DNA from: Heterodontus francisci
Taxonomy: Eukaryota
DNA length: 64,000 nucleotides
Direction of reading: 5' to 3'
Assembly: GCF_036365525.1 (NCBI RefSeq)
Contig: NC_090404.1
Location: 12,304,550 to 12,368,549 of the forward strand
The notes under the pieces were generated by a model, which worked only from the letters and a program-made list of their open reading frames with translations, did no database searches and was not told the DNA's origin. Of this stretch, positions 11,311-52,450 are shown piece after piece. The number at the start of each line of letters is the position of its first letter. The stretch's first letter is position 1. Position numbers and translations under genes: made by a program.

Positions 11311-11356
11311 ATGAGGTTGGCGATTTCTCTCAGTTTATCGCTGGTTTTCTTATCCC
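11311..11356 (+). pseudogene. IGHV: IgH V leader exon (MRLAISLSLSLVFLS)
   Basis: ATG at 11311, hydrophobic signal peptide, phase-1 GTGAGT donor at 11357. Confidence 0.93.
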
Positions 11357-11483
11357 GTGAGTAGTTTTTATTGTCCCAGTCTCTCACTGTTACTGTCTCA
11401 GTGTTAGTCACTCTCTGGAATGTTACAGAGTCAGGAATCATTTCACCAGGATTAATCCTCAGGGTTTTTGATGCTTTTCATAG

Positions 11484-11786
11484 GTGTCCATTCGGATGTC
11501 GTGTTGAGTCAACCAGAGGCAGAGACTGGGAGACCCGGAGGCTCCCTGAGACTGATCTGTAAAACCAGCGGGTTCCATCTTGGCACCTACGGTATGCACT
11601 GGATCCGACAAGTTCCCGGGTAGGGGCTGGAGTGGTTGGTTTATTACTATACTTCATTCATCAATAAATACGCCTCAGGAATTCAGAATCGTTTTTGCGT
11701 CCAAAAAAACATCAAGCAACATATTCGCTTTAGACATGAAGAACCTGAAGATCGAAGATACCGCCATCTATTATTGTGCAAGATAC
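11484..11786 (+). pseudogene. IGHV: Shark IgM VH exon, pseudogenised
   Basis: Acceptor ttttcatag, then [69 protein letters not shown] / ASKKTSSNIFALDMKNLKIEDTAIYYCAR. In-frame TAG at 11621-11623 and a frameshift near 11695. Confidence 0.96.
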
Positions 11787-11825
11787 CACAGTGAGAGGAA
11801 CCCAGGCTGAACCCGTACAAGAAAA
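11787..11825 (+). other. VH recombination signal sequence, 23-bp spacer
   Basis: CACAGTG (11787-11793), 23 nt, ACAAGAAAA (11817-11825). Confidence 0.93.
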
Positions 11826-12484
11826 GCTCGAGGGGAAATTCAACAACTCCTGTTACAGCCTAACGGTCCTTAATTGTATTTAATGCAATATTAACGGCAG
11901 TGTTCAGAACCAGATCATGTACCATTTCTCGAAAAACAGAGTAAAAATTCAATGGTGCAAATCTAAGACACTGACCGATATACTGATGAGCAATTTTGGC
12001 TGCGCTGATTTTTAAAGTTAACAGTGTCAGCAATTGTGGACCTGGATAAGATACTAGTTTCAATGTAACCGATACCGAGAGGGAGTTACTTGGAGCTGTG
12101 TTCAATTCCTACTGTATGGTGTATACTTTTGGATATACTCTGAACTAGATCGAAAGTGAATTTATATTTGAACCGAATGCTGCGAGGCAGTACTGAACAA
12201 ACCTGCGATCAATATCGTGGCAAGGGGTCGAAAATAACAAGGATTAAATAAAATAATGGACATAGATGTTTATAAAAATGTATAAAAGTCTTCTGCTTTA
12301 TTGGTGTTGATTGCCATGCCAACTCTGCAAAAATGCTTCAGAAGTATTCCAGTCTCCTTTATAAATATATTGACCAGTACAAACTGAACTATCTCACTGA
12401 TACACTCTTAAGGGAGTCGGAATCAGATTTTTGGATCGTCCTGTGGAACTTAATATCTGTATTTTACAGTTAACAGTCCACCAG

Positions 12485-12512
12485 GGTATTTGACATGGTG
12501 TATCTCACTGTG
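12485..12512 (-). other. 12-bp-spacer RSS 5' of the D-J segment
   Basis: On +: GGTATTTGA (12485-12493), 12 nt, CACTGTG (12506-12512). No nonamer-like sequence at 22/23 spacing. Confidence 0.85.
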
Positions 12513-12568
12513 ATATCCTGGGTATTTCGACTACTGGGGACAAGGGACCATGGTGACGGTGACTGCAG
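12513..12568 (+). other. IGHJ: JH segment with a D-like 5' extension (probable germline-joined D2-JH), YPGYFDYWGQGTMVTVTA
   Basis: WGQG motif, phase-1 GTAAG donor at 12569, and a 12-RSS directly upstream. Confidence 0.9.
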
Positions 12569-19418: not shown

Positions 19419-19718
19419 CGACACCGTCTCCCCCGACCATCTACGGCCTGCTCTCCTCCTGTGAACAACCCAACACCGATGGTTGAGTAACCTACGGCTG
19501 TTTGGCGATGGACTACACCCCTGAAATCACCACCGTTTCCTGGAAGAAAGATAAACAGCCGATCACCACTGGATTCAAAACTTACCCGTCAGTGCTGAAC
19601 AAGAAGGGAACCTACACCCTGAGCAGCCAGTTAACCATCACCGAGTCAGAGGTGGGAAGCAGCAAAATCTACTGCGAGGTTCGACGCGGAGAGTCGGTCT
19701 GGGTGAAGATTGGACCAG
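19419..19718 (+). pseudogene. IGHM: IgM constant exon Cmu1 with premature stop
   Basis: Acceptor ttttccag; [99 protein letters not shown]; TGA at 19484-19486; donor GTTAG at 19719. Confidence 0.95.
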
Positions 19719-20025: not shown

Positions 20026-20343
20026 GTTATTATGAAAGTTACAGAGTCCATCCAACTGTTATCCTCACTCAGAGTACCAATGAAGAAATCACAAGCAGCA
20101 GATTTGCAACCGCCGTGTGTTCAATCATCGATTTCCATCCAAAATCAATAACCGTGAGTTGGTTGAAGGATGGACAACCCTTGGAGTCGGGCTTCGTCAC
20201 CTCTCCCGTCTGTGGAGCGAACGGGAATTTCTCAGCAACCAGTCGGTTGACAGTCCCCGCTGGGGAATGGTTCACCAATACGGTCTATATCTGCCAGGTC
20301 TCTCATCAAGGGGTTACCCAAAGCCGAACAACCAGATCTCAGG
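20026..20343 (+). pseudogene. IGHM: IgM constant exon Cmu2 (open frame)
   Basis: C1-set Ig domain ...VHPTVILTQ...[20 protein letters not shown]...[14 protein letters not shown]; AG/GT boundaries, phase 1. Confidence 0.93.
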
Positions 20344-22483: not shown

Positions 22484-22792
22484 TTCCACCCTCATGCAAT
22501 GATCCAGTAATTACACTACTGCGACCATCAATAGAACAGGTCTTACTGGAGGCGACGGTGACCTTAACCTGCATCGTGTCTAATGCTCCATATGGAGTCA
22601 ACGTGTCCTGGACCCAAGAAAAGAAGCCTTTGAAATCAGAGATTGCCGTCCAACCCGGAGAGGATCCCGATAGCGTGATCAGCACCGTAAACATCTCGAC
22701 ACAATCCTGGCTGAGTGGGGCTGGGTTCTACTGCGTGGTGAGCGATCAGGATCTGCCGACTCCTCTCAGAGATTCCATCCACAAGGAAGAAG
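22484..22792 (+). pseudogene. IGHM: IgM constant exon Cmu3 (open frame)
   Basis: [42 protein letters not shown]...[22 protein letters not shown]; acceptor ttttacag, donor GTGAG at 22793. Confidence 0.94.
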
Positions 22793-23275: not shown

Positions 23276-23667
23276 TTAAAGATCTGCGGGAACCATCTGT
23301 GTCTGTCCTCCTGCACACGGCAGAAGAAGTCTCCACTCAGAGGTTCCTCTCCCTGACCTGTTTAGTGAGAGGTTTCTCCCCCCGAGAGATCTTCGTCAAG
23401 TGGACCGTCAATGACATTTCGGTGAATCCCGGCAACTACAAGAACACCGGGGTGATGGCGGAGAACGACAATAGCTCCTTCTTCATGTACAGCCTGTTAT
23501 CCATTGCAGCGGAGGAGTGGGCCAGCGGCGCTTCTTACTCCTGTGTGGTGGGACATGAAGCGATCCCCTTGAAGATCATCAACAGAACAGTTAATGAATC
23601 CAGCGGTAAACCGAGTTTAGTGAACATTCCGCTTGCACTGTTGGACAATGTCAATTCATGTCAATGA
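23276..23667 (+). pseudogene. IGHM: IgM Cmu4 plus secretory tailpiece (open frame)
   Basis: [12 protein letters not shown]...[17 protein letters not shown]...[23 protein letters not shown]|[20 protein letters not shown]; internal G|GTAAA donor at 23606 for the membrane form; penultimate Cys retained. Confidence 0.95.
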
Positions 23668-23695
23668 GAATCTCTCAGTTATATTTCAGTCCTGA

Positions 23696-26585: not shown

Positions 26586-26713
26586 ATTCCTTAGATCACA
26601 TCTGGATTCAAGACAATGAGGAGGAGAGCGGCAACATCTGGACAACCGCTTCCACGTTCATCATCCTGTTCTTCCTGAGTATTTTCTACAGTACTGCCGT
26701 CACTCTGGTGAAG
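26586..26713 (+). pseudogene. IGHM: IgM transmembrane exon TM1, splice donor apparently mutated
   Basis: [43 protein letters not shown] with the conserved Ig TM motif, followed by CTGAGA where GTGAGA is expected. Confidence 0.9.
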
Positions 26714-29339
26714 CTGAGAAGCTTCAATCCACTCACACTTCAATCTGACTGAAGCTGTTTGACAAATCTCTAAAATGCTTCATGGAACAAAAATAAAAAC
26801 TTGAGATAATTGCCCCAGTCCATGAAATCTCAGCTTTATTCTTTTTTTTTTTGCTGGTCAATTGATTGGTTGAATTTTGGGCGCTGTGGATTTTCGTGAT
26901 CTGTTTATTAACATTTCTGAATCAAAAAATAATGTCCTCTTGGTGCCTCTAAAAGTAAAACACCTTCAGTTGACAGATCCGAATCTTCAGCTAAGAAAAA
27001 TCATCAGTGACATTTTCGTCTCTCTGTTTGAAATCTGTGAGATAATCGTGACTATAATATAAAGACATATCAGCATTGTACTATTCTTTGAAATGCATGT
27101 ATAAATAAGTAATTTTCTCACTCCTTATTCACAATTGTTTCCTTCCCTTTACGTTGAGCCTCTGTTTTCTCTCTGTGGTCTTTTACATTTATATAAACTG
27201 CTGGCAGCTCAGACCGGAAGTGTTCTATTCTCAACATGATAATTAATTGTTTTAATCACTTTGTATTAACTGTAAAAAAAGCTGTAAAATTTTCTCTGTG
27301 AAACTGTTAATAAATCATGCTTGAAAAATTGATTACGTTGGACTTTGCAGAATAATTTCCTCCATGGCTTCTCCATACCGCTCCATTTTCCATATCACTC
27401 GATTTTCTCCCTTTTCCCTGGCAGATATTTTTCAATCAGTACTGTTTGGGTTGTGTTGTTGTGTTTGTGCATTGGACCCTTTTGCTAAGGGGAATGGCAC
27501 CACCCAGTGTCCCATCAGAGTAAAGACACTTTTAGCTCTGCCTGTTGAAGTCAAGTCCCAGAGGCAGTATGACTGCACAGCGGCCAGGAGAACCTCAATG
27601 ACTTCTCTTGTCGACTGTCACAATCACGTGCCAGGTTATATGAAAGAGCAGGGCTGTGCTCCACCACAGCTTGATACAGTACAGTATATGGAAGAATAAA
27701 TCTCCCTCTACACTGTCTAATCAAACACTCCTAAGGACATGTACAACACTGGTTAGGTACGGGGAGATGTTCCCTGTATAGTGTCCCATCAAACACTCCC
27801 AAGGCCTTGTACAACACAGGTTGGGTACAGAGTGATGCTCCCTTTACACTGTCCCATCAAATACTTCCAGAACAGGTACAGCACGGGTTAGATATATTAC
27901 CTGGGCACAACAGTGAGCACACACCCTGGGAACAATTCCCAGAGGCTAGAGTCTATTTGACACACCAGGGAGCACAATCCCTGGGAATGATCACAAGACC
28001 ATGAAGCCGACCCGACACAGAGACTCTATCTTCGCATTTTCTATGATACACACAGACAGATTCTCCACAAGCACATACACGCAAACACACACACATACGC
28101 ACACTCCACTTTTCTGTTCTGCCCACGCTGTCTCTCTGCCTCTACCTTTTCTGTTAGATCCATTAATCCTGCCACAGTCTCCTGTTCCCCTGATTACCTT
28201 TCTCCCTGCCAGCTCCATTTCTTCTGATGCAAATATCCCTGAACACACTGAACATCACCCCAGGGATCCTCTCTCCCTGCACCATTCCCTGTGATACTAT
28301 CTCCCTGAACTCACTGAACATTACTCCAGGCATTCGCCAGTGACCTTGACGCTGTCCCTTCCTGAAGTTTCTCGCGACCTCCTTCACCATCTCATCACAT
28401 TCTTTCGGCGCCTCCCGGCCACGCGAACTTCTGCAGATGTTTCTGCTGAGAACCGAGATTCTTTTGAGATTTTCCTTCCACTGGGCAGCCGCTTTTCCTC
28501 TAAACATCTGCTGGTCAGGTGCGACGTCTCCTGTGGTTGAATATCGCATTAGTTAAGGGAAGAGAGAATTAACGGCCCTTCTGAAGGGCTCGGAATGATA
28601 TTTGGGAAAGGCTGGCGTTGATGCTTGAACTTTATCCTTGCCCCACTCTCTCTCCCTCTTCCACCCCACTGCCGTCATTCGGGGCTACCCTGACCTCTAA
28701 GCTTATCTTTAACCTCCATCAATGTCTCTCTCGATCTCTCTGCACATTCGCTAGGCTCGAGCAGACATAATCGGTGCATGGCCCCTTTACATGCCAGGCC
28801 AGACCAATCTTGGGTCACAGCCGTGGCTCATGGGTCACAGAGGTTAAGCGGAGACTGCAAACGGCACGGGACCGCTTGACCCATAATTAATTCGGGGAAA
28901 CAACCAATCATGGTCCTGCGAATTTCGGAAAGCATTGTGGCGTCATCCACAGAAGCGCAAACCGGCGTGCGCCACGTTTGTGTGACGTTCCGCACTGCCC
29001 TTGTTTGTCGTTTATTTAAAAGAGGAACTCGATTGAAAGGAAAACAGACTTCAGTTTCCACCAAAATAACAGCTCCACCTTAATCTTCAAAAGTGAAACC
29101 TTAATCTATGAAAGTGAAACTTTGGTCAGCGCTGTGGTTAAACCGGTTGTGGATGTAAGCATGTACGGCCGGTGCCACAAATAGGGCCTTTCCCAGCCGC
29201 TATGAATTGTGGGAGTCGTATCTCTCCGTGGCCCAGTCATGAACTGTGAATTCAAACCCAACCTCCTTCCAGCAGCGAACTGCCCGGGTTGTTGGTTTTG
29301 ACTGACTCAAAAATGAGGTGCTAACCTAATGAAGCTACG

Positions 29340-32300
29340 ACACAGGCTACATGCATGCTAAACAGCAAAAGCAGCATGTCATAGCGAGAGCTAAACAATC
29401 CGACAAACAGATGATTAGAGCAAAGCTCTGCATCCCTGCCCCAACCAGTCATGAATGGTTTTGAGGAATTGAACAACTAACTGGAGGCAAAGGGTCCAAA
29501 AACATCCCCAACATAAATGATGGGCGAGTCCAGCACGTCAGTGCAAAAGACAACGCTGAAGCATCTGCAAACACACACAACCAGAAGTGCCGAGTGGCTG
29601 ATGCATCTTGTCCTCCTCCAGAGGTCCTCAGTATCACCGATGGGAGTCGTCATCCAATTCGATTCACTTGACATGATACCACAAAATCACTGAAGGTACT
29701 GGATACAGCAAAGGTTAGGGGCCCTGACAAGATCCCTTGTGTAGTGAACCCTTGTGTTCTGGAATTAGTCGCACCCCTAGCCAAGCTGTCCTACTACAGC
29801 TACAACACTGGCATCTAGCCAATAATGTGGGAAATTGCCCAGGTATGTCCTGTCCACAAGCAGTTGGACAAATCCAATCTGGCCAGTTGCTGCCCCATCA
29901 ATCTACTCTGGACCGTCAGCAAAGTGATGGAATGTGTCATTGACAATGTTATCAACAGCACTTATTCAATTATAACTTGCTCACTCATGCTCAGTTTGGG
30001 TTCCACGAGGACCACGCAGCTCCAGACCTCATTACAGCCATGGTCCAAGTATGGGCAAAAGAGCTGAATTCAAGAGGTGAGGCGAGAATGACTGCCCTTG
30101 ATATCAAGGCAGCATTTGACTGAGGGTGGTGTTTATGAGCCTTCGAAAAACTGAAGTCAATAGGAATCAAGAGGGAAACTGTCCTCTGGTTGGAGTCGTT
30201 CCGCGGACAAAGGGGGACAGCTGTGGTTGTTGGAAGCCAATCATTTCAGCCATATGACATGGCTGCAGGAGTGCTTCCCACATACTGTCGAATTCAATCC
30301 CTTGAGAAGAGGTGAGATTGACTGCCCTTGACAACAAAGCAGCATTTGACTGAGTATGGCATCACGGAGCCTGACCAAAACGGGAGGCAATGGGAATCAG
30401 GGGGAAAGCTCTCCGTTGGTTGGAGTCATACCTAAGCGCAAAGGAAGATGGTTGTGGTTGTTGGAAGTCAATCATCTCAGCTCCAGGACATCACTGTAGG
30501 AGTTCCTTAGGATAGTGTCCTAGGCCCAAACTTCTTCATCTGCTTCATCAATGAACTTCCTTCAATCATAAGGTCAGAAGTGGGACTGTTCACTAATGAT
30601 TCAGTACCATTCACAACTCCCCAGGTAGTGAAGTAGTCCCTGTAGAAATGCATCAAGACCTGGGCAACATTCAAACTTGAGCTGATAAGTGGCACATAAC
30701 ATTTGCACCACACATGTGCCAAGCAACGACCATCTCGAAGAAGAGAGAATCTAACTATCTCCCCTTGACATTCAATTGTGCTACCATCACTGAATTCACC
30801 ACCATTAATATCTTGGGGTTTACCATTGACCAGAAACTTAATTGGAACATCCATATAAATACTGTTGCGACAAGAGCAGTTCAGAGGTTGGGAATTCTGA
30901 GGTGAGTAACTCACTTCCTGACTCCCCAATATTGTCCCATCATCTACAATATGATTGTCCAGCCTTTTTGGTGGGGGTGGGGGGGGGGGGGGACATTACT
31001 ATTTTTGTCTTACACATGAGGCCGGTGAGGCAATTTTGGAAGGACAAAGGCACTAAAATGTATTTTTTACAATTAATCTAAGTAGAAACAAATGTACATT
31101 TTTGTGACAAAGCTTAAAATGAGAATACTAATTAATTGACTTACTTTCTCTTCTCTATGTTGGACACTGATTTAATGAAATACCTGGCATTTTTGTGCTT
31201 GCACAAGTCGTCAATATTTGCCCGCACACTTTTAGTGATGCGGAGTATTCTGAATAGGTGTCCTTCTGTCAGGAGTGATCTTGATCACTCCCCCTTTCTC
31301 TCTATTCTCTGTCTTTCCCTCTCTGTCCCCCTTCCTCTCTCGCTGTCCCCTTTCCTTCACTGTCTCTCTTTGCCCCCGTCACTCCCACTCTCTCTCTGTC
31401 CCCTCTCTCTCTGTCATCTTCTCTCTCTCCATCACCCTCTTCTCTCTTTCCCACTCTCTCGATGTCCCCTCCCTCTTGCTATATCTCTCTGTCTCCCTTT
31501 CTGTCTCTTTTTCTCTATTACTCTTTCTCTGTTCCCGCTCACTCTTTCCTCTTTCTCTCTCTGTGCCCCTTTCTCTCTGTCTCTCTCTCTCTCTTTCTCT
31601 GTCTCTCTCTGTGCCCCCCTCCCTCCCTCTCTCCCTCTGACAGTTGCAGAGGGGAACGCTCGGCAGATGGCTAATCAGTTTATTTTTAAAAAAAATCGCC
31701 CTGTCAGTTCCACAGCTGACAGTTACACAAATTTGGACAGGTTCAGGTTTTTTTAAAGCCCACCAGAAAACTCCGAATCTGCCCAAAGTTAGAAAAAGCA
31801 TGCTCCCACTGTCACTGACTGTCTACTGTAAAATTGACTTCCGATCTTTTTAAAAGCCGGTCTGCAAGAAGAAGACAAAGGGAGATTTCTCATCTCCAGT
31901 CATGGACCCTAAGCGAGGATGAGAAATGGTCCGGTACAGTTTACAGCAGGCTGGATGGAAACTTTCGGCATGCCGGATCCTGGCCACCTGTCGTATGTTG
32001 GACAATCCTGAGCTACCAGAAACAAGTCAGGAGTGTGATGGAATACTCTCCACTTTCCTGGATGGGTGCAGCTCCAACAACACTCAAGAAGCTTGAAACC
32101 ATCCAGGACAAAGCAGCCCGCTAGACTGGCACTCCATCTAAACCCATCAACATTCACTCCCTTCATCACTGACGCACAGTGACAGCAATGTGTACCATCT
32201 GCAAGATGCACTGCAGCAACTCATCAAACCTCCTTCGACAGCACCTTCCAAACCCACGGATTCTACCACCAAGAAGGAAAAGGGCAGCAGATGCATGGGA

Positions 32301-33084: not shown

Positions 33085-33440
33085 AACTGCCAGCTTGGCT
33101 CATTCGATCTCACTCCTGTATCTGAGTTGGCAGGTTCTAGCATCAAGCTTCACTCCAGAGACTTCAGTCCATAATCCCGGCTGACACTCCCGGTATCAGT
33201 ACTGGGGGAGCGCTGAACTGTTGGAGTTGCTACATTTTGGATGAGATGTTAAATGGCTAGCCCAGCAGCACTCTTAGTAAAAGATCCTATGGACACTATT
33301 GGTAAAAGGACAGCGGATTTCTCCCTGATGTCCTGGGCCAATTCTTGTTTCTGACATTAACACGTTATTCTTTGTGGGAATTTGCTGTGTGCATATCATC
33401 TTCTGCTTTTCATACATTACAACAGTGACTACACTTCAGA
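33085..33440 (+). mobile_element. Deu-domain SINE
   Basis: GGATGAGATGTTAAA...AAAGATCCTATGG...TGTCCTGGGCCAAT...TTTGTGGGAATTTGCTGTG. Confidence 0.65.
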
Positions 33441-34214
33441 ATTACCATGAGTCAGGCAGGCGGGATTTCCTAGAGGACATTATTCGTAGATATGGAATAT
33501 TAAGTATTGCAATTCCTGGAACTGTCTCACTTCCAGAATCACGCAGATAATGTTATTTATTTGGCAGAGCCTCACGCCTGGACGATGGGGTGCTGCGCCT
33601 TTCAAGGGAGCCGATTGGATTTGCACCAACTCACAAACAGTACTTCAGCCCACACCCTAAATGTTTCTCTACATCTGAGCAAGCAACATAAGACTGAACT
33701 CAGAGCAGCTAGACTTTAAGTTAAATTAGCTTCATTAATCTGCTCAAACTTTCTCCTCCATCTTTTGCGTACCCACATCCTTCAAAATAGGGCTTTCGAT
33801 GGCCCAGATTTAACGGCAAAAAATAAGATGAAAAACGTAGGCTGCCAGTTGTTATAGTAAAAACTATGATGAAATATGTGAGTTCGAATACGTTCCTCTT
33901 CTGGTCGGTAACCCTGAGCAACGGTTTCCATCTGTTGCTTGTTAAGACAAGGGGAATACGGCAGCATTAACCTCAATAGTACCAGTTATTATTTTTCTGT
34001 AATGCTTTTAGTGTTGGGAATGTGTGAGAATGGGAGGACAAGTGCAGAGAGGGTTGCAATCCGGGAAATGTTACAATAATCAGCAAGCCGCTTGAAATGC
34101 AGCAGAGGACTGTGAAAATCTGCAAATAAGTTGCAGTTCACCGCTTTTTTGAGTGATCTTCGGGGCCGTTTATTTTTTATTTCATTATACTTACATGTTA
34201 AATGTATGCTTTGA

Positions 34215-35380
34215 CGGAATATGGTCCTTGCTGGCAACATTTGTTGCCCATGCCTAATTGCCCTTGAGAAGGTGGTGGTGAGCTGCCTACTTGAACCGCT
34301 GAAGTCCATGTGCAGCAGATACACCCACAGTGCTGTTAGGAAGGGAGTTACAGGAATTTGAACGAGCGATAGTGAAGGAATGGCGATATAGTTCCAAGTC
34401 AGGATGGTGTGTGGCTTGGAGGGGAACTTTCAGCGGCTCATGTTCCCACGCATCTGCTGCCCTTATACTTCTAGTGGTAGAGGTCTCAGACTTGGAAGGT
34501 GGGGTCGAAGAATCCTCAGCGAGTTGTTGCATTGCATCTAGTATATCGTACACATTTGTTGCCCATGCCTAATTGCCCTTGAGAAGGTGGTGGTGAGCTG
34601 CCTTCTTGAACCGCTGAAGTCCATGTGCAGCAGATACACCCACAGTGCTGTTAGGAAGGGAGTTACAGGAATTTGTGTGTCGGTAATGGAGGGACTGAAT
34701 GTTTAAGGTTGTGAATGAGGTGCCAATCAAGCGGTCGGCTTGTCCTGGATGGTGTCGGGATTCCTGAGTGTTTCTGAAGCCGCAGTCATCCAGGCAAGTG
34801 GAGAGTATTCTATCACACTCCTGACATGTGCCTTGTAGATGGTGAACAGACATGAACAGAATGAGAATTCCCAGCCTCTGCCCTGCTCTGAAAGCCACAG
34901 TATTTATGTAACTGGTGCAGTTCAGTTTCTGATCAATGGTGACCCCCTGCGATGTTGATATTAGAGGTTTAGTGATCGTAATAACATTTATTGTCAAGGT
35001 AGGAGATCACGCTTTCTCTTGGAGATGGCCATTGGTTCACACTTACATTGTGCGAATGTTATTTGCCACTTATCCACGAAACCTGAATGTTGAAAGTTGC
35101 ATGCTGGCACAGACTGCTTCAATATCTGAAGAGTCGTGAATGGTGCTGAACATTATGCAATCATCAGCGAACATATTCACTTCTGACCTTACGATGGAGG
35201 GAAGGTCATTGATGTAGCAGCTGAAGACGGTGGAGCCTAGGACACGACACTAAGGAATTCCTGCAGCAATGTCCTGGGGCTGAGATGTTTGGCCTCCAAC
35301 CACCACCACCATTTTCCTTTGTTTTAGGCATGACTCCAACCACTTAGACAGTTTTCCCGTGATTCCCTTTGACTTCAATA
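34215..35380 (-). mobile_element. Family B LINE 3' fragment with duplicated tail segment
   Basis: Reverse complement of the 8385-10250 family; SCNSLPNSTVGV...LQRFKKAAHHHLLKGN. Confidence 0.88.
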
Positions 35381-36409
35381 GAATTCGCTAATTGACTTGT
35401 TCTTCTATACAACAGTTTTCATTTTTTAAAATAAGAATGGACAGTAGATTCTATTAGCTTGGAGGGCAAGGTCTCCTGTGAATAAAAACAGAAATCTTTC
35501 AATCATTTTACATTAATTTCAACCTTTCAAGCTCCAAGAAATGGAAAACTCTTTCTTACTTCGTGTAGAGGAAGGCACATTAGGAAAGTAAGGAAAGAAA
35601 CATGAAAGAAAGTGAGAAATAATAACTGCGAAACACAAAGCTACAAAGTAAGAGAAAGCCACGAATAAAGCAGTTCAGAAATAAAAATACATTTTCCTTT
35701 CAATTCACTCGGATTTCCCTTCCTCCTATTTACATAGTTGAATTGTTTGTCACACGTCACCCAACAATCGGCGCTGAAAACTGCGCCATAGGTGAACTCG
35801 CACTTTACCCATTATCCGGATACTGTAAAGTTCACAGCGTCACCGCCAGCCGGCGCAGTGGTCACACATTTCTCACTGTTATCAGCAAGAAATTATCGAG
35901 ATAAAACTTTGTGGTAACACTGCCAGAATTTCCATTTGCTGCTCTCGCTCTCATCCGCCTTTCCTGGCCTGTGCTATTGGTGAGATTTCTGCTGCTGTTC
36001 CCTGTTTGGCATTGGTTGGATCAGCAGTGCAGTGGAATGGATATCTGTACTTCTGCTCTGATAGAAGTTTCCCAGACTGCCGAGTTACAGACTCAGGAAG
36101 CACAATGCGGAACCACATCTCACCACTCCTCATCACTTTTCAGGAAGCATTTTGTTTCCATTAAAATACATTATCCCCCTTAATGCTATAACCCTGATGT
36201 TATCGTTGGCAGAATGATGGTGATGATGAGGAGGAGGTGGAGGATGTGATGATGACTGTTGCTATTACTTGATATTCGAATGGAGTCACCAAGACACAGT
36301 GGACAGTCGGTTCCTGAATTGATTGTTGAAGAGGAAAACAATGTCACACCCGCCCGCACCTTGAAAACAAGCTATTCTAACCATTCTGTACTCTGCACAG
36401 TCAACACCC

Positions 36410-37530
36410 AGGACAACAAAGAACAAAGAATTGTACAGCACAGGAACAGGCCATTCGGCCCTCCAAGCCTGCTCCGATCTTGATGCCTGTGTAAATTGAA
36501 ACATTCTGCACTTCTGGGGACCGTATCTCTCTATTCCCATCCTATTCATGTATTTGTCAAGATGCCTCTTAAACGTCGCTATCGTACCTGCTTCCACCAC
36601 CTCCCCCGGCAGCAAGTTCCAGGCACTCACCACCCTCTGTGTAAAGAACTTGCCTCGCACATCCCCTCTAAACTTTGCCCCTCGCACCTTAAACCCATGC
36701 CCCCTAGTAACTGATTCTTCGACCCTGGGAAAAAGCTTCTGACTATCCACCCTGTCCATGCCACTCATAACTTTGTAAACCTCCCGCCCATCCACCTCCG
36801 TCGTTCCAATGAAAACAATCCGAGTTTATCCAACCTCTCCTCATAGCTAATGCCCCCCAGACCAGGCAACATCCTGGTAAACCTCTTCTGTAGCCTCTCC
36901 AAAGCCTCCACGTTCTTCTGGTAGTGTGGCGACCAGAATTACACGCAATATTCTAAGTGTGGCCTAACTAAGGTTCAGTACAGCTGCAGCATGACTTGCC
37001 AATTTTTATACTCTATGCCCCTAACGATGAAGGCATGCATGCCGTATGCCTTCTTGACTACTTTATCCAACTGCGTTGCCACTTTCAGTGACCTGTGGAC
37101 CTGTACGCCCAGATCTCTCTGCCTGTCAATACTCCTAAGGGTTCTGCCATTTACTATATACTTCCCACCTGTATTAGATCTTCCAAAATGCATTACCTCA
37201 CATTTGCCCGGATTAAACTCCATCTGGCATTTCTCTGCCCAAGTCTCCAACAGATCTATATCCTGCTGTATCCTCTGACAATCCTCATCACTATCCGCAA
37301 CTCCACCAACCTTTTTGTCGTCCGCAAACCTACTAATCAGACCAGCTGCATTTTCCTCCAAATCATTTATATATAATACACACAGCAAAGGCCCCAGCAC
37401 TGATCCCTGCAGATCAGCCCTCCATTCAGAAAAGCACCCTTCCACTGCTACCCTCTGTCTTCTATGACCAAGCCAGTTCTGTATCCATCTTGCCATCTCA
37501 CCTCTGATCCTGTGTGACTTCACCTTTTGT
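36410..37530 (-). mobile_element. CR1-like LINE (family A), young subfamily
   Basis: QGSVLGPLL, SRFADD, QMEFNPGKCEVMHFG; highly similar to 47040-48570. Confidence 0.92.
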
Positions 37531-37554
37531 ACCTCCCTGTCCACCGATATCTGA

Positions 37555-39900
37555 ACATAAGAAATAGGAGTAGGAGTAGGCCATACGTCCCCTTGAGCTT
37601 GCTTCACCATTCAGTAAGGTCATGGCTGATTTGATCTTGGCCTCAACTCCACTTTTCTGCCTGTTCTCCCTAACCCATGTCTACCCGATAACTCAAGAAT
37701 CTGTCTATCTATGTCAGCCTTGAATATATTCAATGACCCAGCCTCCACTGCTCTCGGAGGTAGAGAATTACAAAGATACACGCCATCCCACTGGAAGAAG
37801 TGCCTCCTGATCTCCGTTTTAAATAGGCAGCGCCCTATTCTGAAACCATGCCCTCAGTTCCAGATTCCCCCACGAGGGGAAACATGCTCTGATCAGCAAC
37901 ACTCAAATCCCCTCAGAATATTATATGTTTCAACAAGATCACTTCTCATTCTTATAAACTCCCATGAATTAAGGCCCAAACTGATCAACCTTTCCCCATA
38001 TGATAACCCCTTTGTCCCAGGAATCAACCTGGTGAACCTTCTCTGAACTGCCTCGAATGCAAGAATATGTGTCCTTAAATAAGGAGATAAAACTGCACGC
38101 AGCACTTAAGATGTTGTTTCACCAACGCCCTGTAAAGCCGTAGCAAAACCTTTCTACTTTTATGCTGCATTTATTTGCAACAAAGCCTAACTTTCCACTT
38201 GCCTTCCTAATTACTTGCTTTGACTGTATGCTAACCTTTTGTGTTTCGTGCACGTGGACACCCAGATCCCGTTGTACTACAGCATTCTGTAATCTCTCCC
38301 CATTTAAATAATATTGTGTTTTCTTATTCTTCCTACCAAAGTGGACAACATAAGGTTTTCCCACATTATACTTCATCAGCCAAATTTATGCCCACCCACT
38401 TAATCTACCTATTTCTCTTTGTAGACTCTGTGTGTGTTCCTCACAACTTGATTTCCCACCTATCTTTGTATTGTCAGCAAATTTGGCTACAATACACTCG
38501 GTCCCACATGTCATTAAGATAGACTGTGAATAGTTGAGGCCCCTGCGCTGATTTCTGTGGTACCTCACTAGCTACAGTTTGCCAACCCGTATATGACATA
38601 TTTATCCCGAGTCTCTGTTTTCTGTAAGTTAGCCAATCGTCTATCCATGCTAATATATGACCCCCAACACCATGAGTTCTTATCTTTTACAGTAACCCTT
38701 CATGTGGTACCTTATCAAAAGCCTTTTGGAAATCGAAATACCCTACATCTAAAGGTTCGCCTTTTCCCAACCTGCTCGTTACTTCCTCAAAGAACCCTAA
38801 TGAGTTTTTCAAACATGATTTCCCTTTCATAAAGCCATGTTACCTCTGCCGGATTGGATTATAGTTTTCTAAATATCCCGTTACTACTCCCTTGATAATA
38901 AATTCCAGCATTTTACCGATGTCAGAGGTTAGACTGACTAGTCTGTAGTTTCCTCATTGAAACATGTAAAATTCTCAAGGGGCTGGCTATGGTATACGCT
39001 GAGAGATCATTTCCATTGGTCGGGGAATCTAAAACATGGGGGCCCAGTTTCAGGATAAGGGGCCGATAAGTTAGGACTGAGATGAGGAGAAATTACTTCA
39101 CTCAAAGAGTTGTGAATCTTTGGAAATCTCTACCCCAGAGGGTTGTGGAAGCTCCATCGTTGAATACATTTAAAGCTGAGATAGACAGTTTTTGGTCTCT
39201 CAGGGAATCAAGGGGTTTGGCGAGCGGGAGGGAAAGTGGAATTGTATCCTAAAATCAGCCATGATCATTTTGAATGGCACAGCAGGCTCGATAGGCCATA
39301 AGGCCTACATCTGCTCTTATTTCTTATGTTTTTATGTCCTGCTTTCTGTGACCCTCCTTTCTTGAATAGAAGCGAAACATTTCTGGTTTTCCAATCTGCT
39401 GGGGCCTTTCCAGAATCTAGGGAGTTTTGGAAGCTTACAAACAATGCATTCACAATCTCAGCAGCCACTTCTTTTAAGACTCCAGAATGGAGGCCATCAG
39501 ATCTGGACGACGTTTCAGCCTTCAGTTCCATTATCTTGCTTTGCACTTTTTCTCCAGTGATAATGATTGTTTTACGTTCCTCCCTCCCTTTTCCCCTTAA
39601 TTCTCTACGATTATAGGGATGCATTTACTGTATTCTACCATGAAAACAGATGCAAAACATTTGCTCAAAGTGTCTCCCATTTCCTTGTTTCTTACTACCA
39701 ATTTCTCAGTTTCATCTTCTGAGGACCAACGTTTACTTTAGCTACTCTCTTCCTTATTATATACTTTAGAAACACTTACTGTTTGTTTTTTATATTTCTT
39801 ACTAGTTTACTTTCTTAATCTATTTTCTCTCTGCTCTCTTTTCTTTCGTCATCTTTTGCTGGTTTCTAAAATTTTCCCAATATTCTGGTCTACCAACAAT
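37555..39900. mobile_element. Nested CR1-like LINE fragments (mostly minus strand)
   Basis: AKFADNTKIGG, FEAVQRRFTRLIPG and PADWKTRNVSLLFKKG remnants. Confidence 0.82.
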
Positions 39901-41094
39901 TTTTTTCAGTATACCTCCAGATCACAATTTTAGTTTTGTGGGTTAAATCCCTGGCAGGAAGTTAATTATTGTTTCACCAAAAACTCACCATATTTTGCTA
40001 TGCATGTCAGTTTAATAGTTGAAATCAACTTGCCTCAATGGATTGAGTTGGTACATCCGGCATTAATCATCACAAACAAGCATCCATATATCTTCTGATA
40101 TTAACCAGTGAGCAGGACACTTGAGTGGAAGGTGTGGGAGATGGGGAAAGGATATTAAAATGTGAATGACAGACACACCCTGAGATCTGTTTTCTGAAGC
40201 CATTCACTGTACCGTTAGTGGAGATCGATGTTAAAGGGGCAAAAGAAAAACAGAAGCCAATTGTATTTGTTTATTTTACTTCTCTACTCCTTTCTTAATC
40301 TCAATGAATGTTGGAAGAACAGTTTTTCATGCGCTGCTGATTTTGAGTTCTTGTTAATGCGAACGCGTCCAACACCTCATCCTGAGGGCTGTGAACCCGC
40401 TCTGCTCCCGTGGGATGAGTGGGTAATTACTGAAAAGCACCGCTGCGCCGCTCCCTCCATTCTGCCTCATTGCAAATCCAAAAAATCTGAAGGTTTTGGA
40501 TCTGTAAAGAAGTCCTCACAGGCGCAATGAAGCTACCAGATAGAATTTAAACATCGTTTTATCTCCAAACCATAGAAGGAGACAGTACTTGAACTTCGAA
40601 GCATTGTTAAAATTAAAGGGTGATTTTATTCTTGACATTTATTATTCACCATTCTAATATGACCAGTCTAGGAATCACTCTGACAAAATATGGAACCATT
40701 GTTAGTTCACCAGTTGTTGACCTGTGAGGGAAAGCTCACTGGAGTCATGGTTACCAGTGTCCTGAGGTTAACGGAATTCTAAAGAACAGATTGATAAAGC
40801 AAACCCATTAAAATGCCCGAGTTTCCGGGTCACATTTACGAGATATGGAATTCATTCCCACCCGGTATTTAAAGGCAGAGCCATTCCCCCTATAAGGACA
40901 GTGACTGCAGTCCAGCTCAAGGTGTTTCCATTCACCGGAAGCCAACTCACCACCTACCGCTCTCACATCACCACTGGGGACACAAGGAAGTGAGGTGAGA
41001 GCATTCTGAGACACCACAGCTGATTACTGAGGGTGGAGATTAGAACGGGTGTCTTCAAATATCCAAATCCCCTTTTACAGAGCGGACAGCGACA

Positions 41095-41140
41095 ATGTGG
41101 CTACTCAGCATCTGGGTTGTGTGGGGAGCATTTCTGACAG
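41095..41140 (+). CDS. TCR alpha/delta-type V gene 1, leader exon (MWLLSIWVVWGAFLT)
   Basis: ATG, hydrophobic leader, phase-1 GTAAT donor. Confidence 0.9.
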
Positions 41141-41240: not shown

Positions 41241-41549
41241 ATTTTAGTCAAGGAAATTCTGTCACTCAGCTACTGTCCTCAGATGTTAAGACAGAAGGTG
41301 AAACGGTGACTTTAAGCTGTACCTATGACACTACATGGAGCAGCTATGATTTATATTGGTACCGGCAACACCCAGATACACAGCCCGAATTTATAGTGAG
41401 GAAATCCTCAGGTGGTTATGAAGATAAAGCAGATTTTGCTAAAACCCGTTTCTCTGCTGAGCTCCAGACTTCGACTAAATACATCAGTTTAACCATCTCG
41501 TGGCTGCAGCTGACTGACGCTGCCGTGTATTACTGCGCCCTCTCAGACT
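41241..41549 (+). CDS. TCR alpha/delta-type V gene 1, V exon (intact)
   Basis: DFSQGNSVTQLLSSDVKTEGETVTLSCTYDTTWSSYDLYWYRQHPDTQPEFIVRKSSGGYEDKADFAKTRFSAELQTSTKYISLTISWLQLTDAAVYYCALSD; both Cys, WYRQ and YYCAL present. Confidence 0.93.
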
Positions 41550-41588
41550 CACAGTGATGGAAAACAGCCTCACCCCTGTACAAAAACT
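41550..41588 (+). other. 23-RSS of TCR V gene 1
   Basis: CACAGTG, 23 nt, ACAAAAACT. Confidence 0.96.
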
Positions 41589-44814: not shown

Positions 44815-44935
44815 GTTTTTTGTTTGGGATCCTCTATATCTCTGCAGCAGTGTGAGACTCATGGCACAGAAACACTCTTGATGTCGGAGATCAGGCCACG
44901 GTCGATCACAGATCAGTAATTTGGTACTTTTATCA
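44815..44935 (-). pseudogene. Inverted TCR V remnant (end of FR3 plus RSS)
   Basis: Minus strand ...CTGATCTCCGACATC...TTCTGTGCCATGAGTCT, then CACACTG, 24 nt, ACAAAAAAC. Clearly paralogous to the V at 52165-52450. The 5' part is lost at a Penelope-like insertion. Confidence 0.7.
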
Positions 44936-44969
44936 AACATAGAAGACAAGTTATCAGCGATGTCAGTGA

Positions 44970-45800
44970 CCAAAGCAGAAAATGCTAGAAATTCCCAGCG
45001 GGTCAGGAATCATCTGTGGAGAGAAAGCATAGTTAAAGCATCAGGTCTGTGACCTTTCATCAGAACTGGCTAAAGTTACAAATGTAATGGGATTTGAGCA
45101 AGGGAAAGGCGGGAGAGCAGAAGAAGAGCAAAAGGGAAGGTCTGTGATGAGGTGGAGGAACAGCAAAGATTAAATGGCAAAAGCTTTCATGGCACAAAGT
45201 CAAGGAAAGAAACAGAAGGTGTGTCTGGATGCGGTGTAAATGGCAGAAGAGCAGCCGTCAGAACGCAAAGTAAAGCGATTAGGAAAGGGGGAAATGAACC
45301 AGCAAAAACACGAAAAAAGAACAAAAATGGGGGCAGAGGTTAGGATTTAAAATTGTTGAATTTATTGTTGAGTACTGAAGGCTGTAAAGTGCCCAGTCAA
45401 AATATAAGCTCCTGTTACTCCAGCTTGCATTGAGCTTCATTGAGACACTGTAGCGGCCCAAGGACAGAAAAGTCAGAGTGGGAGCAAAGTGGAGAATTTA
45501 AATGACAAGTGAAAGGAAGCTCGGAGTCGCGCTTGCAAACTGAGCAGAAGTGTTCTATAAAGTGCTCACTCAGTCTGCCTTTTGTCTCCCCAGTGTAGAG
45601 GATACCGCATCGAGAGCAGTGTATGCAGTACACTAAACAAAAAGAAGTACAAGTAAATCGCTGACTTGGAAGGAGTGTTTGGGGTCCTGGATGGCAGGAA
45701 AGGAAGAGGTAAAAGGGCAAGTGTTGCATCTCCTGCGCTTGCATGAAAAGGTGCCATAGGAAAGGGGGGAGGTGCTCGGGATGACCAGGGTGTCACGGAG
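44970..45800 (-). mobile_element. Penelope-like retroelement 3' fragment (GIY-YIG endonuclease)
   Basis: LVYCIHCSRCGILYTGETKGRLSEHFIEH in ORF 45415-45744. Confidence 0.8.
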
Positions 45801-46146
45801 GGTAGTCAGTCAATACAAAAACCGACAAAGACGTCCCAATTCCTTTCACTGAATCTGGATTGTCATCTGATATTGGAACACAAACCAAATTATGGAGGTA
45901 AACAAACAAGTCAATAAATGGACAAATAGTTCATTAAACAGTTAGAGAGATAGACAGATAATGGACAGTTGCCCTGCCCTCACTTCCTCCCTCAATGATC
46001 ACTTCTTCCTTTGTTTGAAAGTATCCAGCTCCTGCAGACAGGCGCCTGTGAAATCTGGTTGTGGAGTCTGCGAGCGTAAAATGCGATGTTTCACTACTCA
46101 GTGACGCGTTTGTTCTCGTTATATTGGGAGCTGAATAATGAGATAG

Positions 46147-49719: not shown

Positions 49720-49771
49720 ATGCCGGCTGTTAACTTTTATTTATTCTTCATAGCTGCAGTTCTCTTAACTG
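49720..49771 (+). CDS. TCR alpha/delta-type V gene 2, leader exon (MPAVNFYLFFIAAVLLT)
   Basis: ATG, hydrophobic leader, phase-1 GTAAG donor. Confidence 0.88.
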
Positions 49772-50218
49772 GTAAGTTCACAATTGACACAACGCTGCCT
49801 TTCACATCATATTTAATCGGTCTGTTCTCTGAACACAAGGGAAACAATAGATTGATCTAAAGTGAGCAAAACAATCCGAATGCACCTTTATTCAAAACTG
49901 AACACTAAGGTAACTCGACAAGCTCCACGAGTAAAAGAAATTGGAAGTTGTGAGCTGGGATTACAGGAGAATGACAGACAGACCCATTCATCCCCCACCA
50001 GGCCTAATGACCGACACTGACACGCGAGTCTTAACCCGACAGACAGTTTGCCGTTTTCCCTTTATGCAGTCGATCCCAGAATTATCCTCTTGCAGCTCCT
50101 GAATTGCGGAAAATGTATTTGTGTTTAACTGTCCTGATTTAATTCTCAGAGTGGCGAAGGGCTGATTCTGGGGGTGAAGTGATATTGTTGAATTGAATAA
50201 CGCTCTGCGTTCTTGCAG

Positions 50219-50525
50219 GACGTTGCCGAGGAGACTCAGTTTCACAGACACCGGCTGTAATCACAGTAAATGAAGGAGACGATGTTGAGTTGCACTGTAA
50301 TTATACAGCTACAAGCACCAGCACTCCAAACCTATTTTGGTACCGCCAGTATCCCAGCAGATCCATAAAATATCTACTGCAGAAAAACAAATACAGTGAG
50401 GAACGAAATAGATTTCTCAGCGACCGTTTTTCAGTGCAGCTAGATGATTCGAACGGAACCGTCCCGCTGGAAGTGTCTAAAACCGAACTGCCCGACTCTG
50501 CGGTGTATTACTGCGCACTGAGCCC
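50219..50525 (+). CDS. TCR alpha/delta-type V gene 2, V exon (intact)
   Basis: GRCRGDSVSQTPAVITVNEGDDVELHCNYTATSTSTPNLFWYRQYPSRSIKYLLQKNKYSEERNRFLSDRFSVQLDDSNGTVPLEVSKTELPDSAVYYCALS; acceptor tcttgcag. Confidence 0.93.
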
Positions 50526-50564
50526 CACAGAGACACAGAGCTTGGCTGAACCTGTACAAAAACT
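50526..50564 (+). other. 23-RSS of TCR V gene 2
   Basis: CACAGAG, 23 nt, ACAAAAACT. Confidence 0.92.
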
Positions 50565-50859
50565 GTCATAGAGAGTCGCTCAACAGAACAGCGAGTTAGG
50601 GAAACGTTGTGATCTGAGGCGAGTACCTTCATTTGTGATTAGACCTTCTACTGTTAATGTTAATATACAGCTAGTTTTATTCCTGCAATTTTTCACTTTT
50701 CAAATAATGATCTAATTTCCTTTTATAAGTAACGATTGAATCAAGCTCCACCAACATTTTCAGACAGTGTATCACGGAGCATAACATCTCGCTGAATTAA
50801 AGGAAAATTGTCTTCCATTTTCCTCTGGTTCCTTTGGCAGGTAGCTTTGTGTTTGTGTA

Positions 50860-51370
50860 GACCTGCAACCCGGTACAACCCGCTTCCATCTCCTTCCTAA
50901 AATGCACAATCAGGACTGTCCTGGCAGACCCATCGTTTCAGCCTGTTCCACTGAACTTATTTCTTCCTATCTTGACTCTCTCTTTTCTCCTCATTACAGT
51001 CTCTTCCCGCCTACATCCGTGACTCTTCTGATGCCCTAAGTCATTTTGACCATTTACACTTTCCTGGCTCTAACAGCCTCCCTTTCACTACGTACGTCCA
51101 ATCTCTCTACACCTCCATCCCTCACCAGGACGGTTTGAGGGCTCTCCGCTTCTTCCTTGAACAGAGGCCCAAACAATCCCCATCCACCACCACCCTCCTC
51201 CACCTGGCTGAACTTGTTCTCACATTGAACAATTTCTCGTTCGGCTGCACTCACTTCTTTCAAATAAAAGGTGTTGCAATGAGTACCCGCATGGGTCTTA
51301 GTTATGCCTGTTTTTTGTGAGATATGTGGAACATTCCTTGTTCCAGTCCTACTCAGGCCCCTTCCCCAAC
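50860..51370 (+). mobile_element. Penelope-like RT fragment
   Basis: LLHLAELVLTLNNFSF...FFQIKGVAMSTRMGLSYAC, matching the Penelope RT Q..G.AMG motif. Confidence 0.78.
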
Positions 51371-52164
51371 TCTAGAATGCAATGGCCTAATGGTGAAGTG
51401 TGACAATTCTTTCACCTACTTTTTTTCCTCAGTGTATCATAAACAGACAGACTGACAATTTTATTGAACATTGTGCACCAAAGGAATTGTTATTGTTGAC
51501 CAAAAATTACAAATATCCAGAGAACATCTGAACTCTCAAGTTCCTTTATTCCTCCGCAAGAGTCAGCGCCAGAGTCAGTGACAACATTCACTTATCGTAC
51601 GTTGTGATAAACTTTCTTCGATTTAAAAGTGCATCTTTTGCCGTTTGAAATCTCACGTTAGTGGTTAACTTCATTTTCTGACTGTTTCCACAGCGATCAG
51701 TAGAGTTTCCTCTTTGCTTTGCGCTGTTACAGTCCGTCTTTTACAGACTGTGTTGATGAGTGGTCAACAGCTCTTGGGACTGCCCGCACCCCATCCCCAT
51801 CCCTCCAGCCACCCGCCCACCCCCACCCGCCCCCGTCAACACCCGGATTCAGTCTCCAATCCGCTCAGTGATTCTCTCTGCTCAACAGCCAACCTGCAGT
51901 CTGTCGTGACCCAGGGAGCACCCGGCTGGAAGGAAGTTGGGTTTGGATTGACTCCGTTGATGACTGGGCAACGGAGGGCTGCGGCTCCCACAATTCACAG
52001 CTGTTGGGAAAGGCCTGGGATGTCGCTGACAGTCACCGTTCAGTCAATGACGCTGCACTCTGAAGGTATTGCGTCATCTACCGTCAACAAACGAGACAAT
52101 ATTGCTTCTGTTTTTGGGTGTGGGAGCGCCCTCTCGTGAAGAGTATGTCAACTCTCTGTGTGTT

Positions 52165-52450
52165 TTTTTTTGCATGGGGTCCGCTGTATCTCTGCAGCAG
52201 TGTAGGCTCCATGGCACAGAAATACACGGCGATGTCGCAGATCAGAACATTGATGATCGATCGGTCAGTGAAGCCGGGGTTCCGGTTTACTATACCTGCA
52301 ATAAAATAAAACTGGTACTGAGAAGGCTGCTGGGGGTACCGAGTGCAACAGTACACTCTCGGGCTAAGATCGCTTGTTTTCAAGGTACAGTTTAGTGTGA
52401 CATTGCTTTCTTCTACCGTCTATTTAGGAACCGGGAATAAATTACTTTAC
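52165..52450 (-). pseudogene. Inverted TCR V pseudogene with degenerate RSS
   Basis: Minus strand PK*TVEESNVTLNCTLKTSDLSPRVYCCTRYPQQPSQYQFYFIAGIVNRNPGFTDRSIINVLICDIAVYFCAME. Stop at 52420-52422, conserved Trp replaced by Cys, Cys-Cys distance 57 versus 72 in V gene 1. RSS is TACACTG, 24 nt, GCAAAAAAA. Confidence 0.8.

What the first reader, a model, noticed from the sequence alone, without database searches (positions are those of the whole stretch)
11311..52450. IgM heavy-chain cluster physically linked to TCR alpha/delta V genes
Seen: a complete IgM mini-cluster ends at about 26.7 kb, intact TCR-type V genes begin 14 kb later, and the VH 23-RSS has the same polarity as those of the two intact TCR Vs. 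Established: sharks make chimeric IgHV-TCRdelta rearrangements, and Ig/TCRAD linkage is reported in cartilaginous fish, so the general principle is not new. Inference: this is an Ig cluster at or within the TCRAD V array, the architecture that would allow such chimeras by ordinary cis deletion. This particular VH is now dead, so it would be a fossil donor.
Basis: partly seen in the sequence, partly recalled or inferred. Interest (0 to 1): 0.8.

Follow-up and report, generated by a model that had tools for sequence, protein, structure and literature searches.

The report
Dead shark IgM cluster beside TCR V genes
A broken shark IgM antibody gene cluster is followed 14 kb later by four T-cell-receptor alpha/delta-type V segments, two of them intact, which is one more local example of an antibody/T-cell-receptor gene neighbourhood published for sharks and rays in 2025.

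Summary
An IgM heavy-chain minicluster lies on the + strand at 11.3-26.7 kb: split leader, VH, 23-RSS, 12-RSS, J, Cmu1-4 with secretory tail, TM1. It is a pseudogene. VH carries an in-frame TAG and a frameshift. No free D segment exists.

After 14.3 kb of transposon-rich, gap-free DNA come four TCR alpha/delta-type V segments. V1 (41.1-41.6 kb) and V2 (49.7-50.6 kb) are structurally intact, on the + strand, with 23-RSSs of the same polarity as the VH. Two relics on the - strand are decayed.

V1 and V2 group with TCR alpha/delta V genes. A relative of V2 occurs in a V-J-C-alpha protein. The VH fragment matches only antibody VH.

The window holds no TCR D, J or C, so "cis deletion onto D-delta" cannot be judged.

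The layout itself, IgH clusters linked to TCR alpha/delta with TCR-type V exons between clusters, was published for four elasmobranchs in 2025 (PMC12227049). This scan has already noted it many times elsewhere on this same genome.

Verdict: real but ordinary.

The parts
11311..11356 (+). VH leader exon (46 nt, phase 1, GT donor)
11484..11786 (+). VH V exon, a pseudogene: in-frame TAG at 11621-11623 and a frameshift in a T-run near 11693-11697
   Evidence: its first 45 residues match antibody VH only
11787..11825 (+). VH 23-spacer RSS (CACAGTG-23-ACAAGAAAA)
12485..12512 (+). 12-spacer RSS in front of J (GGTATTTGA-12-CACTGTG)
12513..12568 (+). JH of 56 nt (..YFDYWGQGTMVTVTA), with about 13 extra 5' bases that may be a germline-joined D. 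No free D lies between V and J.
19419..19718 (+). Cmu1 exon with an in-frame TGA at 19484-19486
20047..20343 (+). Cmu2 exon, open
   Evidence: (C1-set 3.7e-17)
22484..22792 (+). Cmu3 exon, open
23276..23667 (+). Cmu4 exon plus secretory tailpiece, open. The internal donor for the membrane form follows 23605.
   Evidence: C1-set 3.1e-20; aligns end to end with Cmu4 and tailpiece of solved IgM
26586..26712 (+). TM1 exon (..[27 protein letters not shown]). The expected donor after it reads CT, so it is possibly a further lesion. TM2 was not identified.
26713..41094 (.). Spacer without Ig or TCR exons. It consists of interspersed repeats, including a reverse-transcriptase fragment at 36978-37610 (-).
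41095..41140 (+). TCR V1 leader exon (MWLLSIWVVWGAFLT)
   Evidence: The same leader-to-V splice appears in RNA contigs of close paralogues.
41241..41549 (+). TCR alpha/delta-type V1 exon, open, ending ..YYCALSD
   Evidence: (V-set 2.4e-16)
41550..41588 (+). V1 23-spacer RSS, a perfect match to CACAGTG-23-ACAAAAACT
44815..44973 (-). Decayed TCR-type V relic: only the FR3 tail (..FCAMS) plus an RSS-like site (CACACTG-24-ACAAAAAAC, 44815-44854)
49720..49771 (+). TCR V2 leader exon (MPAVNFYLFFIAAVLLT, donor GTAAGT), followed by a 447-nt intron
   Evidence: it matches the leader of the TCR alpha chain P0021
50219..50525 (+). TCR alpha/delta-type V2 exon, open, ending ..YYCALS
   Evidence: (V-set 3.5e-16)
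50526..50564 (+). V2 23-spacer RSS (CACAGAG-23-ACAAAAACT, one mismatch in the heptamer)
52087..52419 (-). Decayed TCR-type V pseudogene (..DIAVYFCAME). The conserved Trp is lost and there is no Pfam match.

Best explanation
This is a pseudogenised elasmobranch IgM heavy-chain minicluster: V, (D)J, Cmu1-4, TM. It is separated by 14.3 kb of transposon debris from a small patch of four TCR alpha/delta-type V segments. Two of those are structurally intact and co-oriented with the cluster. Two are decayed and inverted.

It is one local unit of the elasmobranch antigen-receptor complex, where many IgH miniclusters lie near the TCR alpha/delta locus with TCR-type V exons between them.

Shown here:
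- the anatomy;
- the lesions in VH and Cmu1;
- the class of each V;
- the absence of TCR D, J or C in the window.

Inferred:
- The juxtaposition is a by-product of repeated duplication and decay of miniclusters and V segments in one region, not a working Ig/TCR unit.
- This IgM cluster makes no heavy chain.
- V1 and V2, if used at all, would have to rearrange over long range to TCR D/J segments elsewhere on the chromosome.
For: - Exon-by-exon anatomy and lesions.
- Cmu exons are C1-set.
- Cmu4 with its tail aligns end to end with solved IgM and is 79% identical to a bamboo-shark protein.
- The VH fragment matches antibody VH only.
- V1 and V2 are V-set domains with split leaders and 23-RSSs.
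- Among chains with a single V domain, their best solved relatives are TCR alpha and delta chains.
- V1 relatives include a teleost protein named TCR alpha/delta variable.
- P0021 is 59% identical to V2 and continues into a J and a constant part. That constant part aligns with TCR alpha chains well past the V domain.
- No TCR J or C lies in the window.
- The spacer consists of repeats.
- The window has no gaps.
Against: - Nothing in the window contradicts this reading.
- Contiguity across 27-41 kb was not tested independently. Reads could be laid on 40.0-46.0 kb only, and those runs may come from the assembly's own sample.
- Use of this V1 copy or this V2 copy in transcripts was not shown. The RNA contigs on V1 carry 2-9 differences and so come from paralogues.
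- Neighbouring IgM clusters and the distant TCR delta-type C relic are known to me only from unchecked scan notes.
Confidence: 0.85

Rival explanations
1. The cluster lies inside the TCR alpha/delta V array, upstream of and co-oriented with D-delta/J-delta/C-delta. Before it decayed, its VH could therefore be joined to D-delta by ordinary deletion, making it a fossil donor of IgHV-TCR-delta chimeras.
For: - The VH 23-RSS has the same polarity as the V1 and V2 RSSs. By established 12/23 knowledge it would be compatible with a 12-RSS on the 5' side of D-delta.
- VH-to-TCR-delta-D joins are reported as common in sharks, and close linkage is said to support them.
Against: - No TCR D, J or C lies in the 64 kb.
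- The only TCR delta-type constant gene mentioned in the scan notes is a dead copy about 3.7 Mb before the window start (unverified). That is on the side away from which these RSSs point.
- Two of the four TCR V elements are inverted, so orientation is not uniform here.
- The VH, with its stop and frameshift, cannot give a productive chain now.
Confidence: 0.2
2. Assembly artefact: a chimeric contig wrongly joins an IgH cluster to a TCR V region.
For: - The spacer is rich in repeats, where assemblers can err.
- No independent long-read check of 27-41 kb was possible.
Against: - The window has no N.
- Single-copy DNA unitigs with zero differences tile the unique parts of 40.2-46.0 kb, although these may come from the same sample.
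- The same layout is published in four other species.
- The scan has noted it at many other places in this genome.
Confidence: 0.03
3. V1 and V2 are not TCR alpha/delta V genes. They would belong to another V family: an Ig light chain, TCR beta or gamma, or the Ig/TCR-intermediate V exons mentioned by Flajnik et al.
For: - Generic V-set domains score against many antibody chains in the PDB.
- No tree with all shark V classes was built.
Against: - Among chains with one V domain, the best matches are TCR alpha or delta, both for the single sequences and for a V1-family profile.
- A V2 relative is joined to J and C-alpha in P0021.
- A V1 relative is named TCR alpha/delta variable.
- Both end in YYCAL, the usual V-alpha/delta ending (sequence; my own knowledge).
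Confidence: 0.04

Closest known systems
Elasmobranch antigen-receptor complex (AgRC): IgM, IgW and IgNAR miniclusters linked to TCR alpha/delta, with TCR alpha/delta-type V exons between IgH clusters (Flajnik et al., Sci Adv 2025, PMC12227049)
   Same: An IgM minicluster and TCR alpha/delta-type V exons lie on one stretch of DNA, tens of kb apart. The V exons stand outside any V-J-C unit of their own.
   Different: - The species is apparently another one. My best protein matches are only 58-85% identical to bamboo shark. Scan notes say horn shark, which I did not verify.
- Linkage to TCR C genes and PSMB5 cannot be seen from this window.
Shark IgH miniclusters, including germline-joined and pseudogene clusters (horn shark and nurse shark literature; my own knowledge)
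   Same: - V with a 23-RSS, J with a 12-RSS, four Cmu exons, a secretory tail and TM exons, all within about 15 kb.
- Dead clusters and clusters with partly joined segments are known.
   Different: There is no free D1 or D2 here. VH and Cmu1 carry stops.
[quoted passage not shown]
   Same: A VH-type V with a 23-RSS lies in the same chromosomal neighbourhood as TCR alpha/delta V genes.
   Different: - This VH has its own J and Cmu 0.7-15 kb downstream. It is therefore an IgM-cluster VH, not a free-standing V of the TCR locus.
- It is dead, and no chimeric transcript was seen or sought here.

Membership tests
Elasmobranch IgM heavy-chain minicluster | VH with split leader and a 3' 23-spacer RSS | tested here: met
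   The VH fragment matches antibody VH.
Elasmobranch IgM heavy-chain minicluster | One or two D segments flanked by RSSs between V and J | tested here: not met
   A relaxed RSS scan of 11700-12700 finds only the VH RSS and the J RSS. The D may be fused to J or lost.
Elasmobranch IgM heavy-chain minicluster | JH with an RSS and a splice donor | tested here: met
Elasmobranch IgM heavy-chain minicluster | Four C1-set constant exons and a mu-type secretory tailpiece | tested here: met
Elasmobranch IgM heavy-chain minicluster | Two transmembrane exons | tested here: inconclusive
   TM1 was found, with a non-GT sequence at the expected donor. TM2 is too short to identify.
Elasmobranch IgM heavy-chain minicluster | Open reading frames (a functional member) | tested here: not met
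   TAG and a frameshift in VH; TGA in Cmu1. It is a pseudogene member.
TCR alpha/delta V gene segment | Split leader, V-set exon with conserved Cys/Trp/Cys, 3' 23-spacer RSS | tested here: met
   Met for V1 and V2.
TCR alpha/delta V gene segment | Closest relatives are V-alpha/V-delta rather than VH, VL, V-beta or V-gamma | tested here: met
   The best single-V solved chains are TCR alpha or delta. A named teleost TCR alpha/delta V is among the relatives. No full tree was built.
TCR alpha/delta V gene segment | Found joined to J-alpha/C-alpha or to D-delta/J-delta/C-delta in transcripts | tested here: inconclusive
   Shown at family level only. P0021, a V2 relative at 59% identity from an unknown organism, carries J and C-alpha. 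RNA contigs on V1 are from paralogues.
TCR alpha/delta V gene segment | Lies upstream of TCR D-J-C on the same chromosome | not testable with these tools
   The window holds no TCR D, J or C.
AgRC layout (Flajnik 2025) | TCR alpha/delta-type V exons next to or between IgH miniclusters | tested here: met
   One cluster plus four V elements lie in the window. Neighbouring clusters are known only from scan notes.
AgRC layout (Flajnik 2025) | Linkage to TCR alpha/delta constant genes and PSMB5 | not testable with these tools
   These lie outside the window.
TAILV | IgH-like V standing in the TCR delta locus without its own Ig J-C | tested here: not met
   The VH is followed by its own J at 0.7 kb and by Cmu exons.

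The most novel reading that the evidence does not exclude
V1 and V2 are intact TCR alpha/delta-type V genes with 23-RSSs, standing between IgM clusters. Scan notes place a complete V-D1-D2-J-Cmu cluster 34 kb beyond the window end.

If that cluster is on the same strand, ordinary deletion could join V1 or V2 to its 12-RSS D or J. The product would be an IgM heavy chain carrying a TCR-type V, the reverse of the known IgHV-TCR-delta chimeras.

Nothing here shows this. The strand of that cluster is unknown to me.
Probability: 0.05. Interest if true: 0.7.

Novelty: new member of a known kind. Interest (0 to 1): 0.2.

Why it matters
The finding adds one annotated example, apparently from a fifth elasmobranch, to the published picture that shark antibody heavy-chain clusters and TCR alpha/delta V genes share one chromosomal region. 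That picture is used to explain Ig/TCR chimeric receptors and the origin of the IgH translocon.

The local detail may help anyone annotating this chromosome:
- a dead V-(D)J-Cmu cluster;
- two intact and two decayed TCR V segments;
- mixed orientation of those V segments.

It opens no new question by itself.

Tried and rejected
1. I first read the ATG at 50113 as the V2 leader. It has an in-frame TAA and would leave an intron of only 44 nt, so I took V2 for a pseudogene. A systematic scan found the real leader at 49720-49771. It matches the leader of the TCR alpha chain P0021, so V2 is intact.

2. The protein atlas could not read the V1 sequence. Its answer for the homologue P0001 did not separate TCR from Ig.

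The bamboo-shark neighbourhoods of the V1 and V2 relatives could therefore not be read.

4. No public run holds more than 19% of the V1 words. Laid contigs could not test contiguity of 27-41 kb, nor expression of this V1 copy.

5. Species identity is not settled. The third word search, with Cmu4, gave bamboo shark at 79% as best match and no named horn-shark protein within the length range.

6. Three cited papers were not held (Deiss 2019, Ott 2021, Criscitiello 2010).

7. Scans for TCR J segments and TCR C exons found nothing beyond the IgM J and C exons.

8. A self-comparison showed only interspersed repeats and no duplicated Ig/TCR module within the window.

The constant and V exons were searched exon by exon.
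Full report
**What is in the sequence**

The window has no N. An IgM heavy-chain minicluster lies on the + strand.

| Element | Coordinates | Note |
|---|---|---|
| VH leader | 11311-11356 | split leader |
| VH exon | 11484-11786 | pseudogene, see below |
| VH 23-RSS | 11787-11825 | CACAGTG-23-ACAAGAAAA |
| J 12-RSS | 12485-12512 | |
| J | 12513-12568 | 56 nt, YFDYWGQGTMVTVTA, GT donor |
| Cmu1 | 19419-19718 | in-frame TGA |
| Cmu2 | 20047-20343 | open |
| Cmu3 | 22484-22792 | open |
| Cmu4 + secretory tail | 23276-23667 | open |
| TM1 | from 26586 | in phase with an internal GGTAAA donor in Cmu4 |

The constant exons are C1-set domains. Cmu4 with its tail aligns end to end with Cmu4 and the tailpiece of solved human and mouse IgM. 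It is 79% identical to a bamboo-shark protein. The first 45 residues of the VH match only antibody VH domains among the best 60 solved chains.

- VH has an in-frame TAG at 11621-11623, where a Lys of ..VPGKGLEW.. is expected.
- VH has a frameshift in a run of T near 11693-11697.
- Cmu1 has an in-frame TGA at 19484-19486, inside ..[14 protein letters not shown]...
- After the last TM1 codons (..VTLVK) the sequence reads CTGAGA where a GT donor is expected. I mark this as a possible fourth lesion, because I had no reference TM sequence.
- A relaxed RSS scan finds no D segment between V and J.
- The J carries about 13 extra bases at its 5' end. A germline D-J fusion is therefore possible but not shown. 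This agrees with another first-stage note on this window.

**The TCR-type V genes**

A motif scan and tblastn with the window's own exons find four V elements downstream.

- **V1.** Leader 41095-41140, a 100-nt intron, V exon 41241-41549 ending YYCALSD, and a perfect CACAGTG-23-ACAAAAACT RSS.
- **V2.** Leader 49720-49771 (MPAVNFYLFFIAAVLLT, donor GTAAGT), a 447-nt intron, V exon 50219-50525 ending YYCALS, and CACAGAG-23-ACAAAAACT.
- I first mistook a nearer ATG at 50113 for the V2 leader. It carries a stop. One search corrected that reading.
- With up to two mismatches the RSS pattern occurs twice in the window, exactly at these two V ends. Chance would give 0.04.
- **Two relics on the - strand.** One keeps only an FR3 tail (..FCAMS) plus an RSS-like site at 44815-44973. 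The other is a decayed V at 52087-52419 with no Pfam match.

**Class of the V genes**

- V1 and V2 are V-set domains.
- In searches of solved structures, multi-V constructs such as scFv and diabodies have inflated scores. Among chains with a single V domain, the best matches to V1, to V2 and to a profile of the V1 family are TCR alpha and TCR delta chains.
- V1's closest proteins are two bamboo-shark hypothetical proteins at 64-67% identity. More distant relatives are teleost V genes, one of them named TCR alpha/delta variable.
- V2's relatives include bamboo-shark and elephant-shark V domains.
- P0021 is a 212-residue protein whose V is 59% identical to V2. It continues into a J (FGAGTRLIVKP) and a constant part.
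- P0021 aligns with solved TCR alpha chains from the V domain well into C-alpha.
- Conclusion: V1 and V2 are TCR alpha/delta-type V genes. I did not build a tree with all shark V classes.

**What lies between and around**

- From 26.7 to 41.1 kb there is no Ig or TCR exon. The stretch holds copies of an interspersed repeat of about 1.9 kb, and LINE fragments with a reverse-transcriptase domain.
- The window has no TCR J. The only RSS-linked J motif is the IgM J.
- The window has no TCR-type C exon.

**Reads**

- No public run holds more than 19% of the V1 words.
- I laid four runs of one sample on 40.0-46.0 kb. DNA unitigs at depth about 8 with zero differences tile the unique parts: 40204-40990, 41717-42307, 42906-43467, 43587-44469, 44570-45485 and 45730-45999.
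- This sample may be the one the assembly was made from, so it is not independent support. It also says nothing about 27-41 kb.
- Over the V1 exon the DNA depth is 80-300, so the V1 family has many close copies.
- The probable RNA runs give contigs over V1 with 2-9 differences, which means they come from paralogues.
- One such contig shows a joint from 41140 to 41246, with five differing letters replacing 41241-45. It confirms the leader-to-V splice positions for the family.
- Expression of this V1 copy is not shown.

**How it most likely works**

- The IgM cluster cannot make a heavy chain. This is shown by the stops in VH and Cmu1.
- V1 and V2 look usable, but have nothing to join to within 64 kb. 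Any use would require long-range rearrangement to TCR D/J segments elsewhere. That is inference.
- I cannot see the flanks. The only TCR delta-type C that the scan notes mention is a dead copy about 3.7 Mb before the window (unverified).
- The notes also place an IgM cluster and a TCR V just before the window, and a complete IgM cluster 34 kb after it.
- The region therefore reads as alternating IgM clusters and TCR-V patches, not one Ig cluster intruding into a uniform V array.

**Comparison with what is known**

Flajnik et al. [quoted passage not shown] - this proximity supports the known VH-to-TCR-delta-D rearrangements and TAILV.

The present locus is a further instance of that layout. A search of the library found no paper on this layout in horn shark. 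I could not confirm the species myself, because run names are coded and the best protein matches are bamboo shark at 58-85% identity.

The scan has already recorded the same layout at many other places on this genome, several of them followed up with the same verdict.

**Limits**

- The atlas could not read new sequences.
- Three cited papers were not held.
- The exons were searched one by one, and I left out joining them into a spliced protein.

**Verdict**

The finding is an ordinary new example of a published kind.

Noticed in passing
window 19484-19486: An in-frame TGA in Cmu1 (..NTDG*VTYGC..). The constant gene of this cluster is therefore dead as well as its VH.
   Followed up: yes
window 11787-12568: The layout is V, 23-RSS, 690 bp, 12-RSS, J, with no free D segment. 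The J carries about 13 extra 5' bases, so a germline D-J fusion or loss of D is possible.
   Followed up: partly
window 26700-26720: The expected TM1 splice donor after ..VTLVK reads CTGAGA instead of GTGAGA. A GT lies 6 nt upstream. This is a possible further lesion. TM2 was not found.
   Followed up: partly
window 24700-26000: A low-complexity tract of about 1.3 kb, rich in CA on the + strand (GC skew -0.31, AT skew +0.31), lies in the Cmu4-TM1 intron. It gives long Cys/Val-rich and His/Thr-rich pseudo-ORFs.
   Followed up: no
window 41000-41600: The V1 family is multi-copy. DNA word depth is 80-300, against about 8 for flanking single-copy DNA. RNA contigs 93-97% identical to V1 show the same leader-to-V splice.
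   Followed up: partly
window 42200-43000, 44400-44600, 45000-45200: Segments of extremely high copy number (summed word depth 1e5-2e6 in DNA runs) lie between V1 and the minus-strand V relic. They are probably SINE/LINE-type repeats.
   Followed up: no
window 8386-10250, 29309-30950, 32013-32552, 34200-35380, 42128-43088, 53190-54150, 57100-58950, 61080-62555: At least eight copies, 67-83% identical, of an interspersed repeat of up to 1.9 kb, in both orientations. A younger LINE pair (36417-37533 and 47038-48570, 89-90% identical) carries a reverse-transcriptase domain.
   Followed up: partly
window 44815-44973 and 52087-52419 (both - strand): The two decayed V relics share the ending FCAM and a similar RSS spacer (CTGCAGAGATA..). 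They belong to one V family, distinct from V1 and V2. Each lies 1.6-3.3 kb downstream of an intact + strand V.
   Followed up: partly
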